Shown here: in pieces, positions 360 through 20,298 of the stretch
How the letters are laid out: every line of letters begins with the position of its first letter
How positions within the stretch are numbered: position 1 is the stretch's first letter
DNA from: Malacoraja senta
Taxonomy: Eukaryota
Direction of reading: 5' to 3'
NCBI GenBank assembly: GCA_038087875.1
Contig: CM075984.1
Coordinates: 32,922,001-32,986,000 of the forward strand
Length of the DNA stretch: 64,000 nucleotides
Translations under genes and position numbers: made by a program
The notes under the pieces: generated by a model
What the model was told of the DNA's origin: nothing
Seen by the model: the letters and a program-made list of their open reading frames with translations, nothing else
Databases searched by the model: none

Positions 360-488
<129 letters not shown>

Positions 489-1149
489 TGAAGAAGTTGA
501 AAGACAATTTTGTTTCTTAATTGTCCAGAGATGTGGGAAGTAGGGTGCTACTTAATGAAAGTTTTGAATGGATGGTTTTGGATGAGCCCCTTGATGGTTG
601 GGAAAACATACTTCCCATGCTCTGTAATATCTGTTCATGAAACAGATTAATGCTTTCTCTTCTGCGTCAAATCAAAAGGCAAACCATCATGAATGTAATT
701 GTTCTGCAACTCCAATAGAGGGAGATCAGAAAAATATATTAAGCTTTACTACGTCGATGAGAAACATACTGGAAGCCAAGTATCCAGTGCATGATGTTTA
801 CACTCATTTTTTCTACTTATTGAAATGTGTTAGTTTAACCCCACAGTGAAGTATCATAAACAAGGAGATGAATGACCTCCTTGTGTTTGGTTAGAAGCTA
901 TGTGTATGGTTAGAAGATGAATGTTTGCCAAGCCAATTACCCAAGAGGTCTTGGAATAGCGTTTATAGGCTTAAATTTCAGAAATGAGGTTCAGTGGTAC
1001 TTCCTTGAACATATTTTTTCTACAAATTTAAACACCTAATTAGTCTATCAAATCTTCCAGATATGATATCAACGAAATGTTCTAAGATACTTCATAGGAG
1101 AGTTTGTCAGAAAGTTATATGAAATATTAAGATAGAAAAGAGTTAGATT

Positions 1150-1610
1150 TTCAGAAGAAAAGGTTTATTGAGGAAATGTCACATGTTAGGGGCATGGCGG
1201 CTGAGTGTATGGAGCCATTGGTGAAACAGTCAAATCCAAAGTTGATGGAGTGCAGATCTTTCAGAAGGTTGTAGGCCTGGAAGAGATTAATGAAATATGG
1301 AGGCACGAGGGCATGAGACGATCTCAAAAGACGAGTATCTTAAAATGAAGGAATGGTAAACTGCGAGCTAGTACAGGTCAGCAAGTACAGGGGTGATAGA
1401 CAAACTGGAATTAGTGCCACCTGAACATCAGCGATCACGTTTTAGACAGTTTGAAATTTACCTGCTGGAGATTGAGTGAGAGCATCGGGAATATATTAGA
1501 ATAGTTAACCAGTTGTAATAAAAGCAGAGATGAGGATTTCACCAGAAACTGAACTGAGAAAGGTACAGGTGGACAATGATATGGAGGTTAAAATAGATTG
1601 TCTTTTTGAC
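1150..1610 (-). mobile_element. Ancient L2-like LINE fragment
   Basis: Minus-strand translation ...FLSSVSGEILISAFITTG resembles the L2 C-terminal LSSSAAETLIHAFVTSRLDY motif; heavily decayed. Confidence 0.45.
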
Positions 1611-1750
1611 ATTGAAATATTGTCTGCAGCAATTATTGGGATAACAACATGTAGGTCATCGGAAAAAATGGTGAACAGAAACACAAGCCTCCAAAACAGA
1701 GGCATCTTTTCCCAATGGATGAATAGTAAGAAGGAGGGTTTTTTCCCCTT

Positions 1751-1850
1751 TGTGTGTGTGTGTGCGGCATGCACGTACATATGTGTTTGTGTATGTGTCT
1801 CTGTGTGTATGCGCACATTTGCTCGAGTGCGCATGTGTGTATGTGCCAAT
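1751..1850. repeat. Degenerate (TG)n/(RY)n microsatellite
   Basis: tgtgtgtgtgtgtgcggcatgcacgtacatatgtgtttgtgtatgtgt... Confidence 0.85.
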
Positions 1851-2096
1851 GCATATCTGTATTGTGGTCATGCTCATCTGTGTGAAGATTTTGTTAACAT
1901 TTATCCACATTGAGTATGTGTAAAATGTCTTTGTTTTAACTCCTATCAGCTGCACACCATCTAAATTCCAATAATTGCTGCTTTATAAATTGTATACCGG
2001 TGTCTTTTGTTTTTGCTATCTCCTTCACTTTCCCACCGTTTCAACTCCTCACCGCTCCCGACGTGCTCAACCCTGCAACTGTTTAATTCCTGTTAG

Positions 2097-2159
2097 ATTG
2101 AACGGAGAAGAGCAGCTCAGATGTTGCTGGAGTCTCTGGGGGTGTTCTCTCCCAAGGAG
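2097..2159 (+). CDS. KIF1A: Candidate 63-nt alternative cassette exon of KIF1A: IERRRAAQMLLESLGVFSPKE
   Basis: ttcctgttag acceptor, GAG|gtttgt donor, phase 0-0, no stop; last 8 codons parallel LGVFSPKK of exon 401-476. Confidence 0.65.
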
Positions 2160-4624
2160 GTTTGTTTTGGTGACCATGTGTGTGAAGTGCTGTGCTCTCT
2201 TGGATTTGGTTTGTTCTATCACTTATAATATGGAATCCTCGATTCCATTGGCTGGTTCGGATACATTCATCAGCATCACCGCCCTGTCTTTAAGAGCCCA
2301 ACTTAATCGAAGAAAATGTTCCCAGTCCATCAACTTTTGAAGAGGACTTTGCGACCTAACTCCATTCACACTCCAACTCTGTCCTCTTGTCTCTCCTTCT
2401 CCTGTTCCTTCTCTCTGCAACCCCCACCACTCTCTCTTCACTTTCCTCATTTTCTTGGATTTCCTATCCATCCTTCTTCCATTCATCCGTTTCTTCCCAT
2501 TCTACCCCTCGGCCCCAATTATCCACTCATCTTTCCTTCCTCACCTCATTCTCGTTAATGCCATCTCCAATTCTCCCTATAAATGTCATCTGTTTAAGTT
2601 CATGAGAAAATATGGCAGGCGGAAATGATGCATAATCCATCAAGCCTGTCAGTTGCACTGCCAAGATACTGCCTGCTCATTTAACCTCCTGGGAAAAGAT
2701 CCTCTGATTTTCCTAAAGGTAAAATTCCTTTCCTTGACATGTTCTATATCCTTATGCATAAATCCAGCATCTCTCTGCACCCCATGTCGACTGGTTTTGA
2801 CTATTTTTCTTAGTGTTTCTAACTCCTATCAATATGGTTTCCATTTTGTGAGTTAGTGAATCCCAGTATTTGTACTGATTAAATAAATTGTCAGCAGAGG
2901 TTCTAATTACATTGCTGGAGAGCATCTCCCAACAAACTCATCAATCCATGAAGATCATCTATTTCCACAATCCACCTGACATTGTGGCCATTAGCTCAAT
3001 GGAATTTACGGGATTGCTACAGATTGGACAATCTGCATCCACAGAGACATGATGGATCACAGTCTTCACTTACAGTGAGGTACAGATTAGATTTTCAGGT
3101 TTTTGGATCAATGGAGCAGACAGAGGGCTGGAATCATCACTACAGTAGAACCATATTATTTTTCCATCAGACTTTATATACAACCACAACACAAAGGAAG
3201 CATTCATGTATATTAGTTGGCATTGTCAGGGGTTAAAAAATGAGACACCCCAATTTAGCCATTGTCTGAACTGGGTTGACATTATGACCTGGTTTTACAA
3301 TAATCTTACTGAGATTTCTGGAGGGCCAGTAATCCTACTAATAGTACTGACATAACCCTGTTCATAAGCAGCCTCCCCATATAGAGGGAAGACTGGAGTA
3401 TTATAACTAGAATGGTTATAGTTTGCTAATTAGGAACTCGCACTCAAATGTAATATCAAGCCATGAAGATCATTAATATGAGTCCATCTTGTCAGTCTCA
3501 GCCGGAGCATCAGCAGTTGAAAGCCATAATCCTTGCTCAAAAATAAGATAAGAGTAATATCAGCCAGTGGTTCTTAATATTGTTTGTTACACTTGACATG
3601 TTCAAAAATGTACATGTAAACCCATCCCCAGCTCTGATAGCCACAGGCCAGGGCTGTGCTAGCTTTTAGAAAGAGCTAATTGCTTGGTCCTATTCAATTA
3701 TTTATTTCTCGAGTGGATAGGCAATTCACAATGGAAATTTACAACCAAATATTTTCCCACCACACATTCTGTAGTGCCCAACACATCATGACAACAGGTG
3801 TGGAAAAATACCCTTTCCTTCTCTGCCAGTTTTATTGACAAGGGACAATTCTTCAAAGAATTAAAGATGTGGGCAGTGGGGGAGAAGGGCTAAAGTGCTT
3901 TGTTATTATCCCCAATTCACTGTTTAAAGATACACGCAATCCTTTATGCAGAAGAGTGTATGAATTGGTGTTCGTAACCTAAATCTCATCAATCCAACTG
4001 CAAATTATAATGTAATTTTTTGTGTAAAAAAAAGGATTGAAATACCATCAACACGGGGGTTTATGTCAATAAATGCCACTTGAGGGGTTCATAACCCTCC
4101 AAAGTGCCACTGTTGAGGATATATTGCACAGTTTAAGATGCATTGTCTTGGCAGTGCATTTTGAGATCTGTAAGACATGCTCCATTTCCAAGCTGCCTCA
4201 CCTGTGAGTGTTAATATTTGGGTTCCAGAAAATGGTCTATCCTGTGTTAATTAGTTGTTGCATGTTTAATATCTATTCTCTTAGAATCACGTTAAGGACC
4301 ATGGATGATGGATGTATATTTGGGCTAGAAATGTTTCAACCAGTCTAACAACTTTGCATGTGTGCATGTACGTGTGCATGAGTGTGTGTGAAGCATTATT
4401 GGGTGTGATTCCAGCAGCAAAATATGGCCACTGGACCAGAAACCAGCATCGTTTTAAATTTTTTACTTTAAAGAGTAAATCCGTTAATATCAGAACCTTC
4501 CACAATTAGACACGCATTTTCTTTCTGAGAAGAGTCCTGGAAATGAAGTCATCCCTTTAGTACAATTCTGAGGTTAAGTTGTTTGAGTGATTTTGGTTTT
4601 AGTGTTCATGCCATGTAGAAAGAA

Positions 4625-5712
4625 ACCTATGACCTCTGGTTCCCGATTCCCCTACACTGGGCAAGAGACTCTGGGCGTCTACCCAATCTACTCCTCTCAT
4701 GATTTTATATACCTCTATTAGATCACCCCTGATCGTCCTGCGCTCCAAGGAATAGAGTCCTTGTTTGCTTAACCTCTACCCATAGCTCAGGCCCTCGAGT
4801 CATGGCAACATCCTCATAAATCTTCTTTGCACCCTTTCCAGGTTGACATATTGTTCCTACAACATAGTGCCCAAAACTGAACACAATACTCTAAATGCGG
4901 CCTCACCAACGTCTTATACAACTACAACATGACCTCCCAACTTTTATACGCAATGTTCTGACTGATTCAAGGCCAAGGTGCCAAAAGCTTTATTGACCAC
5001 CCTGTCTACCTGTGATGCCACTTTCAACGAACTATGTACCTGCACTCCTGGATCCCTCTGCTATACAACACTCCCCAGAGTCCTACCGTTCAATGTGCAG
5101 GTTCTGCCCATGTTCGTGCTCCCAAAATGAAACACCTCAGATTTATTTGTATTAAATTCCATCAACCATTCCTCAGCACACCTGCCCAACCAATCAAGAT
5201 CCTACTGCTATTTTTGACAACGACTTCACTATCTACAATCCCACCCACTTTTGAGTCATCTGCAAACATGCAAACCATGCCATGTATGTTCTCATCCAAA
5301 TCATTGATATAGATGACAAACAGCAATGAGCCCAGCACCGAATCCTGAGGCACACCAGTAGTCACAGGCCTCCAGTCCGAAAAGCAACCTTTTACCATCA
5401 CCCTCTGCTTCCTTCCATGAAGCCAATTTTCTATCCATTCAACTATCTCCTTGAATCCCATGGGATTTAACATTCCAGAACATTTGATAAGGTACCTAGC
5501 GGAACCTTATCAAATGCCTTACTAAAATCCATGTATACAACATCTGCAACTATGTCTTCATCCCCCTTTTTGGTCACATCGTAACAAAAACTCAGATTCG
5601 TGAGCCACGACCTCCCATGTACAAAATCATGTTGACTATCCCAAATCAGCCCTTGACCATCTAAGTGCATGTATATCCTATCCCTCAGAATACTCTCCAG
5701 TAACTTTCTAGC
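4625..5712 (-). mobile_element. CR1-clade LINE fragment (RT region)
   Basis: ORFs with VYMDFSKAFDKVP, GVPQDSVLG, FADDSKVGG; frameshifted. Confidence 0.9.
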
Positions 5713-5866
5713 CACGGACCACGTTATGTTTCCATTTTTGTAAAAATAATCATTGGGTATTATCCATTTCTCGTCAAATGGCACGTGGTTGTGGAACACA
5801 CTGTTTTAACAATAAAACATGACCATCGTAAGGTCAGTTTCTTCCCCAGTCAGTACTCAGCCAGTG

Positions 5867-6366
5867 AACATATAACAGTACAGCAAAGAAACAGGCCATT
5901 GGCCCACCATGTTTATGCTGACCATGATGCTAAGTTAAACTAACCCTAACTGCTTGAATATCCCTCTATTTCTTGTTTGTTCATGCAAGTGTCTAAATGC
6001 CTCTTAAATGCTACAATTGCTTCTTCCACCTCCACCAGCAGGATGTTCTGGGCACCTATCACTCTGTGTAAAGGTTTGACTCACAAATATCTTTTAAACT
6101 TTCCCCTCATACTTTAATCCTATGCTTTCTAGTATTTGTCATTTTCACCTTGGGAAAATGACTCTGAATGCCTCAGCCTTTGACCCTCTAGAGAAAACAA
6201 TCCAAGTTTGTGCAACTTCTAACAGCTAATACTTGCTAATCCAGGCAACATCCTAGTGAACCTTATCTGTACCCTCTCCAAAGCCAGCACATCCTTCCTA
6301 TGTCCTCTGGTATGGGGACAAGAACTAGAAAACAGTACTCCAAATATGGGTGAACCAAGGTTTTAT
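5867..6366 (-). mobile_element. Old CR1 3' end fragment
   Basis: Reverse complement of CR1 3' UTR (acagtacagca..gaaacaggcc..ggcccac) plus decayed ORF2 C-terminus. Confidence 0.7.
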
Positions 6367-6833
6367 GTGGAATGGGCAGGGAGCTGGGCAGTCAATGCAG
6401 GAATCCCTGGCATGTACAAAATGAATGATTCAAAGAATGGTTGTAGATTTATCTTGCCATGCTTAATGAAAACTAACCAAATGGCAAAAGAACAAATTAA
6501 CATTAATTGCCAGCCAGTCAGTGAGAGCCATGCTTGACCATGCCCAACACCCAAAGGACAAAAACTTCAATGGACAAGAACATGTTTGCCAAATTGAAAG
6601 CTTAATTTCTTAGCTTTGCCAACTCCAGAGTATATGGTATTCATGTTAATGGTGTGCGACTGCACAACAGCCTACCATGGTGGAACTCGAAGGATCTGGA
6701 TGTTATTTATTTTTTAGTTTACTGGGAAACCACTGCAGTGAAGCTAGCAAAATAAACAAATATGTCTGGTCCCACGTTCTTAATGCACAGAAGTCCACAA
6801 TTTCCTTTAACATTATCTAATCTTCCCTTATAG

Positions 6834-6974
<141 letters not shown>

Positions 6975-19490: not shown

Positions 19491-20298
19491 NNNNNNNNNN
19501 NNNNNNNNNNNNNNNNNNNNNNNNNNNNNNNNNNNNNNNNNNNNNNNNNNNNNNNNNNNNNNNNNNNNNNNNNNNNNNNNNNNNNNNNNNNNNNNNNNNN
19601 NNNNNNNNNNNNNNNNNNNNNNNNNNNNNNNNNNNNNNNNNNNNNNNNNNNNNNNNNNNNNNNNNNNNNNNNNNNNNNNNNNNNNNNNNNNNNNNNNNNN
19701 NNNNNNNNNNACACACACTCACTCANNNNNNNNNNNNNNNNNNNNNNNNNNNNNNNNNNNNNNNNNNNNNNNNNNNNNNNNNNNNNNNNNNNNNNNNNNN
19801 NNNNNNNNNNNNNNNNNNNNNNNNNNNNNNNNNNNNNNNNNNNNNNNNNNNNNNNNNNNNNNNNNNNNNNNNNNNNNNNNNNNNNNNNNNNNNNNNNNNN
19901 NNNNNNNNNNNNNNNNNNNNNNNNNNNNNNNNNNNNNNNNNNNNNNNNNNNNNNNNNNNNNNNNNNNNNNNNNNNNNNNNNNNNNNNNNNNNNNNNNNNN
20001 NNNNNNNNNNNNNNNNNNNNNNNNNNNNNNNNNNNNNNNNNNNNNNNNNNNNNNNNNNNNNNNNNNNNNNNNNNNNNNNNNNNNNNNNNNNNNNNNNNNN
20101 NNNNNNNNNNNNNNNNNNNNNNNNNNNNNNNNNNNNNNNNNNNNNNNNNNNNNNNNNNNNNNNNNNNNNNNNNNNNNNNNNNNNNNNNNNNNNNNNNNNN
20201 NNNNNNNNNNNNNNNNNNNNNNNNNNNNNNNNNNNNNNNNNNNNNNNNNNNNNNNNNNNNNNNNNNNNNNNNNNNNNNNNNNNNNNNNNNNNNNNNNN
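19491..20298. other. Assembly gaps (N runs) in or next to a CA-rich microsatellite
   Basis: N runs with a short acacacactcactca island at 19711-19725. Confidence 0.98.

What the first reader, a model, noticed from the sequence alone, without database searches (positions are those of the whole stretch)
2097..2159. Candidate 63-nt KIF1A cassette exon duplicating the CC1-FHA linker motif (IERRRAAQMLLESLGVFSPKE)
Seen: acceptor ...ctcaac...ttcctgttag after a long pyrimidine tract, 21 open codons, donor GAG|gtttgt, and phase 0-0, so it fits exactly between SPKK and TPHLVN. Its last 24 nt (CTG GGG GTG TTC TCT CCC AAG GAG, 2136-2159) parallel 453-476 (TTG GGT GTT TTC TCT CCT AAG AAG). There are 5 differences, 4 of them synonymous, and the donors also match (gtttgtt vs gtatgtt). 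That is the pattern expected of a duplicated exon kept under protein-level selection. Known: the CC1-FHA linker of KIF1A forms a beta-finger involved in dimerisation and autoinhibition, and I do not recall this peptide in canonical human KIF1A isoforms. Inference: the insert (helix-like ERRRAAQMLLESLG, loosely like the CC1 end [14 protein letters not shown], plus a second GVFSPK strand) could be a splicing switch that rewires motor activation. Alternatively ATG 2121 could start a motor-less isoform.
Basis: partly seen in the sequence, partly recalled or inferred. Interest (0 to 1): 0.75.

Follow-up and report, generated by a model that had tools for sequence, protein, structure and literature searches.

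The report
Ancient KIF1A linker cassette exon
The 63-base stretch is very probably a real optional exon of the nerve-cell motor gene KIF1A: the same small exon, repeating one strand of the hinge that controls motor pairing, is conserved in bony-fish KIF1A and in KIF1B of fishes and amniote-like vertebrates, but its use in this animal's RNA could not be tested.

Summary
Window 2097-2159 is a 21-codon open frame (IERRRAAQMLLESLGVFSPKE) bounded by tag| and |gtttgt. It lies between the KIF1A exons ending SPKK (401-476) and starting TPHLVN (6834-6913). Its last 24 nt plus donor match the end of exon A at 25/31 positions; 200 shuffles reached at most 21, and the rest of the window at most 19.

Comparative evidence makes it a real coding exon:
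- Three teleost kif1a loci carry a phase 0-0 unit in the same intron (63-75 nt), ending RKPQPVFIDTVGLFSPNE|gt. Two of them differ by 10 synonymous and 0 non-synonymous codons over that core.
- About ten further teleost lineages keep the same peptide.
- A zebrafish RefSeq model (XP_021326561.1) splices exon A directly onto it.
- KIF1B loci of teleosts and of two amniote-like vertebrates carry a 63-nt unit of the same build.
- The shark peptide matches these in register outside the repeated motif (P about 0.001-0.003).
- Two amniote-like KIF1A loci lack it.

Limits: every sequencing run I could lay was genomic DNA, so inclusion in this species is untested. The "helix-like" and "motor-less isoform" ideas are not supported. 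The proposed function, a longer tether plus a replacement beta-finger strand in the CC1-FHA hub, is inference. I found no paper describing this exon.

The parts
401..476 (+). Constitutive KIF1A exon A, end of CC1 plus first beta-finger strand: (R)[25 protein letters not shown], donor AAG|gtatgt
   Evidence: It is 100% identical to KIF1A CC1-FHA chains 4EJQ/4EGX over these residues. In a relative (run X7) its only two differences are third-codon-position changes.
2010..2096 (+). Pyrimidine-rich upstream region with a candidate branch point ctcaac (2066-2071) and acceptor ttag| (2095-2096)
   Evidence: 72 of the 100 bases upstream are pyrimidines. The same in-frame TAG acceptor followed by AT/CAT is found in KIF1B units L013, L014, L002, L010 and L011.
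2097..2159 (+). 63-nt, 21-codon, phase 0-0 cassette exon: IERRRAAQMLLESLGVFSPKE
   Evidence: 25/31 match to the exon A end; shuffles at most 21; in-register similarity to the teleost kif1a and KIF1B cassettes, P 0.001-0.003.
2160..2168 (+). Weak donor gtttgtttt (+3 T)
   Evidence: the GTTKGT-type donor is shared by 8 of 9 cassette copies in KIF1A and KIF1B loci. The window's exon A uses gtatgt.
6834..6913 (+). Constitutive KIF1A exon C, second beta-finger strand and start of the FHA domain: [26 protein letters not shown](R)

Best explanation
Window 2097-2159 is this species' copy of an ancient, frame-preserving alternative cassette exon of the kinesin-3 genes KIF1A and KIF1B. The gene in the window is KIF1A.

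Origin (inferred from shared architecture). The exon arose by tandem duplication of the 3' part of the exon that ends GVFSPKK. Its position, phase, 63-nt size, TAG acceptor, weak GTTKGT donor and peptide register are shared between KIF1A and KIF1B. The duplication therefore most likely happened before those two genes separated. The unit was later lost from amniote-like KIF1A and from a second teleost kif1a-like group with a ~90-nt intron.

Effect on the protein (shown from sequence). When included, it inserts 21 residues between ...GVFSPKK and TPHLVN.... This is the linker between coiled-coil 1 and the FHA domain. In the solved KIF1A CC1-FHA dimer that linker forms the beta-finger hairpin (from my knowledge of Huo et al. 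2012, not read here).

Mechanism (inferred). The cassette's own G[VL]FSP[KN][EK] is contiguous with TPHLVN, so it probably takes the strand position in the hairpin. The exon-A copy plus about 14 new residues would then become a longer CC1-to-FHA tether, and the residue before TPHLVN changes from K to E. This is expected to shift the monomer/dimer and autoinhibition balance of the motor. The conserved weak donor and weak or pyrimidine-rich acceptor region fit regulated, not constitutive, inclusion.
For: 1. Sequence anatomy and above-chance duplication.
2. Gene identity is KIF1A. Exons D-G resemble the KIF1A-type loci L003 and L016 more than the KIF1B-type loci. PDB 4EJQ/4EGX KIF1A match at E=7e-27.
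3. Teleost kif1a loci L001, L007 and L008/L009 have a unit in the same intron, phase 0-0, 63/69/75 nt, ending VGLFSPNE|gt. L007 versus L008 shows 18 core codons with 10 synonymous and 0 non-synonymous differences.
4. A profile search of 1.84 billion representatives returned 12 significant hits. Apart from P0110, which was already part of the query alignment, and the weakest hit P0251, an unrelated tandem repeat, these are 10 teleost genomic ORFs carrying ..PQPVFIDTVGLFSPNE followed by V (the GT donor) and then unconserved intron.
5. Zebrafish RefSeq XP_021326561.1 reads ...GVFSPKK|PSQRKPQPVFIDTVGLFSPNE|, so it is spliced at the predicted acceptor.
6. KIF1B loci carry a 63-nt unit with the same TAG acceptor and gttggt donor: teleost L002, L010, L011 (HFVEKPCDLYTDFNGVFSPKK) and amniote-like L013, L014 (I[LF]TPRPCDLF..GVFSPKK).
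7. The shark N-terminal 14 residues, outside the repeated motif, match in register the teleost kif1a unit (P=0.0015) and the L013/L014 units (P=0.003/0.001), but not exon A (P=0.26). tblastn of the L013 unit against the window intron hits only 2109-2159 (E=0.003).
8. For the strand-replacement idea: HMMER aligns query residues 39-73 (LGVFSPKE+TPHLVN...) as one contiguous stretch to 4EJQ. In teleost contig L001 the exon-A copy has lost frame and donor, and only the cassette copy remains next to TPHLVN.
Against: - There is no RNA evidence for this species. Both run searches returned runs that proved to be genomic DNA, with flat depth over the introns and no joints at 476, 2097 or 2159.
- I could not see the substitutions in the three related species over 2097-2159, because the differences table was truncated at 1356.
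- No full-length spliced protein with the cassette was recovered. The only spliced example is a truncated predicted zebrafish model that then reads into the intron.
- Searches for short spliced fragments found none with an insert.
- Shark-teleost identity outside the motif is low (1-2 of 14 identical; similarity is mostly conservative).
- The L001 argument rests on a single assembled contig.
- The functional mechanism is entirely inferred.
Confidence: 0.78

Rival explanations
1. Relic pseudo-exon. The unit descends from the ancient cassette but is no longer spliced in this lineage, and it is intact only because too little time has passed since it stopped being used.
For: There is no RNA evidence of inclusion. 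The cassette has demonstrably been lost in other lineages: amniote-like KIF1A L003 and L016, and the teleost group with a ~90-nt intron. The donor is weak (+3 T, +4 T).
Against: Frame, acceptor AG, pyrimidine tract, donor GT and the G-V-F-S-P-K-E codons are all intact. The weak donor is the conserved state of functional copies (8 of 9). In-register similarity to distant orthologues persists, whereas lineages that lost the exon show no trace of it (17/31, chance level).
Confidence: 0.14
2. Chance or lineage-specific duplication with no function. A local duplication of the exon end, or a pyrimidine tract plus AAG/GAG, happens to mimic an exon and is unrelated to the units in other species.
For: Pyrimidine tracts before acceptors can by themselves encode L-F-S-P-Q. 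Examples are P0114/P0116 'TLFSPQ' and P0111 'GLLSPQ', directly upstream of exon C in other species.
Against: The match is 25/31 against a shuffle maximum of 21 and a window-wide next best of 19. The same intron, same phase, same 63-nt length, same TAG acceptor and same donor type occur in KIF1B of distant vertebrates. The similarity extends beyond the pyrimidine-encoded motif.
Confidence: 0.03
3. Alternative first coding exon. Transcription starts in the intron and ATG 2121 initiates a motor-less KIF1A starting MLLESLGVFSPKE-TPHLVN....
For: An ATG lies in frame at 2121.
Against: None of the orthologous or paralogous units contains a Met, so the ATG is not a conserved feature. A conserved acceptor and pyrimidine tract upstream is what an internal exon needs, not a first exon. 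No promoter evidence was sought or seen.
Confidence: 0.02

Closest known systems
Teleost kif1a cassette, as spliced in zebrafish RefSeq model XP_021326561.1 (P0256) and present in loci L001, L007, L008/L009 and about ten further teleost ORFs
   Same: Same gene (KIF1A) and same intron (SPKK|...|TPHLVN). Phase 0-0, 63 nt in L007 and zebrafish. Ends G-[VL]-F-S-P-[KN]-E with a final GAG codon and a GT donor of gtt[tg]gt type. In-register conservative similarity R[RK]xxx[MV][LF][LI][ED][ST][LV].
   Different: The teleost unit lies only ~100 nt after exon A, against 1.6 kb here. It uses an AAG| acceptor instead of TAG|. It is proline-rich (PSQRKPQP) where the shark has ERRRAAQ. Its length varies from 63 to 75 nt. 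The zebrafish model is truncated and reads into the intron.
KIF1B 63-nt cassette in the homologous intron (teleost L002, L010, L011; amniote-like L013, L014)
   Same: Identical architecture: in-frame TAG acceptor, exon starting ATT (L013, L014), 63 nt...GVFSPK[KE]|gtt[gt]gt. tblastn matches 17 residues, RPCDLFLDPSGVFSPKK against RAAQMLLESLGVFSPKE.
   Different: It is in the paralogous gene. The last residue is K, not E. There is a conserved [KR]PCDL[FY] core. Teleost kif1b has a further conserved 54-nt unit (LSDERPFDEQFDCFPTKK) that the window lacks.
Mouse Kif1a exon 13 (hinge cassette; PMC12436618)
   Same: A short frame-preserving alternative exon in the regulatory stalk of KIF1A. Its inclusion lengthens a linker and was shown to promote dimerisation, ATPase activity and velocity. 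It is a working precedent for the mechanism proposed here.
   Different: The location differs: it lies between the neck coil and CC1, not between CC1 and FHA. It encodes 10 residues and is not a duplicate of a neighbouring exon end. It is present in mammals, whereas this cassette is absent from the amniote-like KIF1A loci examined.
KIF1A CC1-FHA dimer structures 4EGX and 4EJQ
   Same: They cover exactly the flanking exons. Residues [25 protein letters not shown] and [27 protein letters not shown] are identical to the window.
   Different: The solved proteins have no insert. The cassette's LGVFSPKE aligns a second time onto the same strand.

Membership tests
Vertebrate KIF1A/KIF1B CC1-FHA-linker cassette exon (defined here from teleost and amniote-like loci) | Lies in the intron between the exon ending GVFSPKK and the exon starting TPHLVN | tested here: met
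   Window 476 | 2097-2159 | 6834. The position is the same in L001, L002, L007, L008, L010, L011, L013 and L014.
Vertebrate KIF1A/KIF1B CC1-FHA-linker cassette exon (defined here from teleost and amniote-like loci) | Phase 0-0, open frame, length a multiple of 3 (63 nt in most copies) | tested here: met
   63 nt, 21 codons. 63 nt in L007, L002, L010, L011, L013, L014; 69 and 75 nt in L008 and L001.
Vertebrate KIF1A/KIF1B CC1-FHA-linker cassette exon (defined here from teleost and amniote-like loci) | Ends G-[VL]-F-S-P-[KN]-[KE] followed by a GT donor of GTTKGT type | tested here: met
   GVFSPKE|gtttgt. 8 of 9 copies have gtt[gt]gt.
Vertebrate KIF1A/KIF1B CC1-FHA-linker cassette exon (defined here from teleost and amniote-like loci) | N-terminal two-thirds similar in register to other cassettes, not merely the repeated motif | tested here: met
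   BLOSUM62 ungapped score against 20,000 shuffles: P=0.0015 (L007), 0.003 and 0.001 (L013, L014), combined 0.0006. Against teleost kif1b P=0.1-0.2, not significant.
Vertebrate KIF1A/KIF1B CC1-FHA-linker cassette exon (defined here from teleost and amniote-like loci) | Purifying selection on the encoded peptide | tested here: inconclusive
   Shown for teleost kif1a (10 synonymous, 0 non-synonymous codons). For the window itself only the paralogue-type comparison with exon A is available (4 synonymous, 1 non-synonymous in 8 codons). Substitutions in relatives were not displayed.
Vertebrate KIF1A/KIF1B CC1-FHA-linker cassette exon (defined here from teleost and amniote-like loci) | Included in mature mRNA | not testable with these tools
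   All runs that hold the locus are genomic DNA, and the run searches are exhausted. The only indirect evidence is that zebrafish RefSeq model P0256 splices the orthologue.
KIF1A gene (kinesin-3) | Flanking exons encode the KIF1A CC1 end, FHA domain and following coiled coil | tested here: met
   4EJQ/4EGX E=7e-27. Exons D-G are KIF1A-type ([16 protein letters not shown]...MEQR) rather than KIF1B-type.
Mutually exclusive exon pair with exon A | Both exons have the same length modulo 3 and the same entry phase | tested here: not met
   Exon A is 76 nt and enters in phase 2. The cassette is 63 nt and open only in phase 0. The only AG upstream is at 2095-2096.
Poison (NMD) exon or recursive-splicing exon | Contains a stop or frameshift, or regenerates a 5' splice site (AG|GTRAGT) at its acceptor | tested here: not met
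   There is no stop and the exon is frame-preserving. The acceptor is followed by ATTGAA, not GT.
Mouse Kif1a exon 13 hinge cassette | Located between the neck coil and CC1 | tested here: not met
   This unit lies after CC1, directly before the FHA domain.

The most novel reading that the evidence does not exclude
The cassette is a vertebrate-wide 'strand-swap' regulatory module of the KIF1A/KIF1B motors, inferred to predate the KIF1A/KIF1B split. Inclusion supplies a second copy of the first beta-finger strand, which replaces the constitutive one next to TPHLVN. This converts the original strand into a longer CC1-FHA tether and retunes the dimerisation/autoinhibition hub. It survives in KIF1B of amniote-like vertebrates, possibly including mammals, where it has apparently not been studied. 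Teleost contig L001 would then be a natural experiment in which the swap has become obligatory.
Probability: 0.3. Interest if true: 0.7.

Novelty: new member of a known kind. Interest (0 to 1): 0.52.

Why it matters
KIF1A is the main fast anterograde motor for synaptic-vesicle precursors and dense-core vesicles. Its activity is set by a monomer/dimer, autoinhibition equilibrium in which CC1, the FHA domain and their linker are central. A short hinge cassette elsewhere in mouse Kif1a already changes dimerisation, ATPase activity and velocity.

A second cassette that sits in the CC1-FHA linker and duplicates one of its strands would be a natural, testable handle on that hub. Because a copy of the same build exists in KIF1B of amniote-like vertebrates, the question may carry over to mammalian cells.

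For genome annotation, it shows that a 63-nt unit in a 6.3-kb intron should be modelled as a coding alternative exon. The loss from amniote-like KIF1A explains why it is missing from the usual reference isoforms.

Tried and rejected
1. RNA evidence. The look-up of sequencing runs on 380-2400 and on exon F, then the single read-laying run on 390-6389 with X1, X7, X3, X5. All four runs behaved as genomic DNA. No joints were seen, and the differences table stopped at 1356, so neither splicing nor close-relative substitutions at 2097-2159 could be read.
2. A spliced 73-aa query against 5.8 billion proteins found no short fragment with an insert. The length filter of that tool excludes full-length KIF1A isoforms, so this is weak negative evidence.
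3. Exact look-up of four window ORFs next to the cassette, meant to pull relatives' contigs: none is in the collection.
4. P0148 (no DNA served), P0198 and P0135: the contigs did not reach the intron.
5. Mutually exclusive splicing with exon A, a poison exon and a recursive-splice exon were rejected on frame and sequence (see the membership test).
6. Rbfox GCATG motifs near the cassette show no conserved occurrence.
7. A possible relic in mammal-like KIF1A (PKPVLASSVG at L003:4654-4683) has E=1.5 and is not significant.
8. Literature. No paper contains the peptides. Searches on KIF1A/KIF1B splice variants and zebrafish kif1aa/kif1ab found nothing on this position. Huo et al. 2012 is not held.
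9. Structure prediction with and without the insert was not run.

Full report
**1. Observation**

- Exon A (401-476) encodes (R)[25 protein letters not shown] and ends AAG|gtatgt.
- At 2097-2159 there are 21 open codons, IERRRAAQMLLESLGVFSPKE. They follow ...ctcaac...ttcctgttag| and are followed by |gtttgt.
- The in-frame TAG directly upstream is the acceptor AG itself.
- Exon C begins at 6834 ([26 protein letters not shown]) and ends at 6913.
- All junctions are phase 0, so inclusion adds exactly 21 residues.

The last 24 nt differ from 453-476 at 5 positions, 4 synonymous and one K>E. The donors agree at 6 of 7 positions.

In an ungapped scan, the 31-mer made of the exon-A end plus its donor matches 2136-2166 at 25/31. 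The best score in 200 shuffles of the intron was 21. The next best site in the whole 64-kb window, on either strand, scored 19.

The stretch is single-copy by word depth. It contains no Rfam family or tandem repeat.

**2. The gene**

Their peptides ([27 protein letters not shown]......[35 protein letters not shown]) are of KIF1A type rather than KIF1B type. The junction region matches the solved KIF1A CC1-FHA chains 4EJQ and 4EGX at E=7e-27. Those chains have no insert, and HMMER aligns the LGVFSPK segment onto them twice.

**3. RNA evidence: none obtainable**

These came from the source species (X1) and three relatives that are about 4% diverged (X7, X3, X5). Depth is flat across exon A, the intron and the candidate, and there are no joints at 476, 2097 or 2159.

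The table of differences was cut off at position 1356, so I could not see how the candidate evolves among close relatives. In exon A the only two differences in X7 are third-codon-position changes.

**4. Comparative evidence**

This is where the case is made.

*First lead.* The short-protein search with the spliced peptide found no fragment carrying an insert. It did turn up P0110, an ORF from a teleost-like kif1a contig (L001) that reads ...VGLFSPNE and then runs into gtgtgt, between exon A and exon C.

*Teleost kif1a.* Fetching contigs through exon-C and exon-F ORFs gave more loci. L007 (NCBI assembly GCA_977066275.1) and L008/L009 have an intact exon A. About 100 nt downstream they carry a second unit: aag|PSQRKPQPVFIDTVGLFSPNE|gttggt (63 nt) and aag|PSDNPRKPQPVFIDTVGLFSPNE|gtttgt (69 nt). 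Over the 18 shared core codons these two loci differ at 10 codons, all synonymously. That is the signature of a translated exon.

*More teleost lineages.* A profile of the units searched against 1.84 billion representatives returned 12 significant hits. One was P0110 itself, which was part of the query alignment, and the weakest (P0251) is an unrelated tandem repeat. The other 10 are teleost genomic ORFs with ..PQPVFIDTVGLFSPNE. In each, conservation starts near the predicted acceptor and stops at NE, followed by V (the GT donor) and divergent intron.

*A spliced model.* The last protein search recovered P0256, which is zebrafish RefSeq XP_021326561.1 'kinesin-like protein KIF1A'. It reads ...[26 protein letters not shown]|PSQRKPQPVFIDTVGLFSPNE|VGRHVF.... 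Exon A is spliced to the unit at exactly the predicted acceptor. The model then runs into the intron. This is a predicted, truncated model, so it is moderate evidence of use, not proof.

**5. The same unit exists in KIF1B**

Teleost kif1b-like loci L002, L010 and L011 have, in the homologous intron, tag|HF[VN]EKPCDLY[TA]DFNGVFSPKK|gttggt. It is 63 nt long. They also carry a further conserved 54-nt unit, LSDERPFDEQFDCFPTKK|gtttgt.

Two KIF1B loci from unidentified, very frequently sequenced vertebrates (L013, L014) carry tag|I[LF]TPRPCDLF[LA]D[PS][SN]GVFSPKK|gttggt, again 63 nt. They look amniote-like from their exon sequences, but I did not determine the species.

The shark unit shares four features with these: the TAG|ATT start, the length, the weak GTTKGT donor (8 of 9 copies) and the reading register.

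Outside the repeated GVFSPK motif, its 14 N-terminal residues score better in register than shuffles:
- against the teleost kif1a unit, P=0.0015;
- against the L013 and L014 units, P=0.003 and 0.001;
- against its own exon A, P=0.26, not significant.

tblastn of the L013 unit against the window intron hits only 2109-2159 (E=0.003).

The simplest reading is one ancient duplication of the exon-A end that created a cassette before KIF1A and KIF1B diverged. Since synonymous sites are long saturated, the 19/24 nucleotide identity inside the shark gene is explained by amino-acid constraint, not by a recent copy.

**6. Losses**

- Two GC-rich, amniote-like KIF1A loci have no unit in the intron: L003 (intron 1.9 kb) and L016 (intron 570 nt). 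The best 31-mer match in L003 is 17/31, at chance level, and tblastn found nothing significant in either. This fits the absence of such an isoform from the mammalian KIF1A literature I could search. The known mouse exon 13 cassette is at the neck-coil/CC1 hinge, a different place.
- A large group of teleost-like ORFs read straight through an 80-100-nt intron between SPKK and TPHLVN without any unit. These are probably a second kif1a paralogue.
- Invertebrate-type sequences have no intron or only a short one there.

**7. Mechanism**

*Shown.* The insert is frame-preserving. It sits between CC1 and the FHA domain, and it repeats the strand that precedes TPHLVN.

*From established knowledge.* CC1-FHA fragments dimerise, and CC1, FHA and CC2 contacts control the monomer/dimer and autoinhibition equilibrium (and Huo et al. 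2012 as cited). That the linker forms a beta-finger hairpin is from my memory of that paper, which I could not read.

*Inferred.* The cassette's G[VL]FSP[KN][EK] is contiguous with TPHLVN, so it takes over the hairpin strand. The exon-A copy and about 14 new residues become a longer tether, which shifts the dimerisation/autoinhibition balance. Two observations lean this way:
- HMMER aligns cassette end plus exon C as one uninterrupted stretch onto 4EJQ.
- In contig L001 the exon-A copy has lost both frame and donor, while an upstream GTAGGT donor and the cassette remain. That would leave the cassette copy as the only strand. This rests on one assembled contig.

The mouse hinge exon 13 shows that a cassette of similar size in this stalk can change dimerisation and speed.

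The ATG at 2121 has no counterpart in any other copy.

**8. Novelty and verdict**

This is an ordinary kind of feature, an alternative cassette exon, but an old and well-conserved one in a mechanistically interesting place.
- It is machine-annotated in at least one zebrafish model.
- I found no paper that mentions the peptides or an exon at this position. The library is incomplete, and I could not query full-length isoform databases.
- I file it as a new member of a known kind.
- My confidence that it is a genuine, selected coding exon is about 0.78. The main rival, at about 0.14, is that it has recently fallen out of use in this lineage.
- The functional model deserves perhaps 0.3-0.4.

Noticed in passing
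L002:1296-1349; L010:7852-7905; L011:7850-7900: Teleost kif1b has a second conserved unit in the same intron: cag|LSDERPFDEQFDCFPTKK|gtttgt, 54 nt, phase 0-0, also ending in an F-x-x-K-K|GT motif. No counterpart was found in the window intron, nor any significant one in L013/L014.
   Followed up: partly
L001:750-870: In this teleost kif1a contig the 3' end of exon A is degenerate (ggtgtttttctccaaagacag: one base short, no GT donor). The cassette copy VGLFSPNE|gtgtgt and an upstream ACA|gtaggt donor are intact. Either the cassette has become obligatory there or the single contig has errors.
   Followed up: partly
P0007, P0023, P0029, P0034-P0036, P0039-P0042: Many teleost-like genomic ORFs read through an in-frame 80-100-nt intron between GVFSPKK and TPHLVN with no cassette (DGITK/DGTTK type). 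This is probably a second kif1a paralogue that lost the unit.
   Followed up: no
window 4590-6389: Very high-copy repeat. Summed word depth reaches 1.5 million, against about 24 for the flanks, with many rearranged joints. The contig of the relative in run X7 jumps from 4520 to 6186, so this transposable-element block is absent or collapsed in that species.
   Followed up: no
window 1740-1870: An imperfect (TG)n / GTGTGTATG-type microsatellite region about 230 nt upstream of the cassette. Word depth is raised to 450-3,500 in runs X1 and X7. TRF did not score it.
   Followed up: no
L013:6357-6419; L014:6178-6240: KIF1B of two unidentified amniote-like hosts, found as contamination in metagenome assemblies, keeps the 63-nt cassette (I[LF]TPRPCDLF..GVFSPKK). 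Whether this is annotated or expressed in human or mouse KIF1B could not be checked here.
   Followed up: partly
window 19491-19710 and 19726-20298: Two runs of N inside the KIF1A gene region.
   Followed up: no
P0111, P0114, P0116, P0118: The pyrimidine tract plus CAG acceptor of exon C translates as ..LFSPQ or ..LLSPQ in several amniote-like loci. An F-S-P string next to a splice site can therefore arise from a polypyrimidine tract alone, which is a caveat for motif-only calls.
   Followed up: yes
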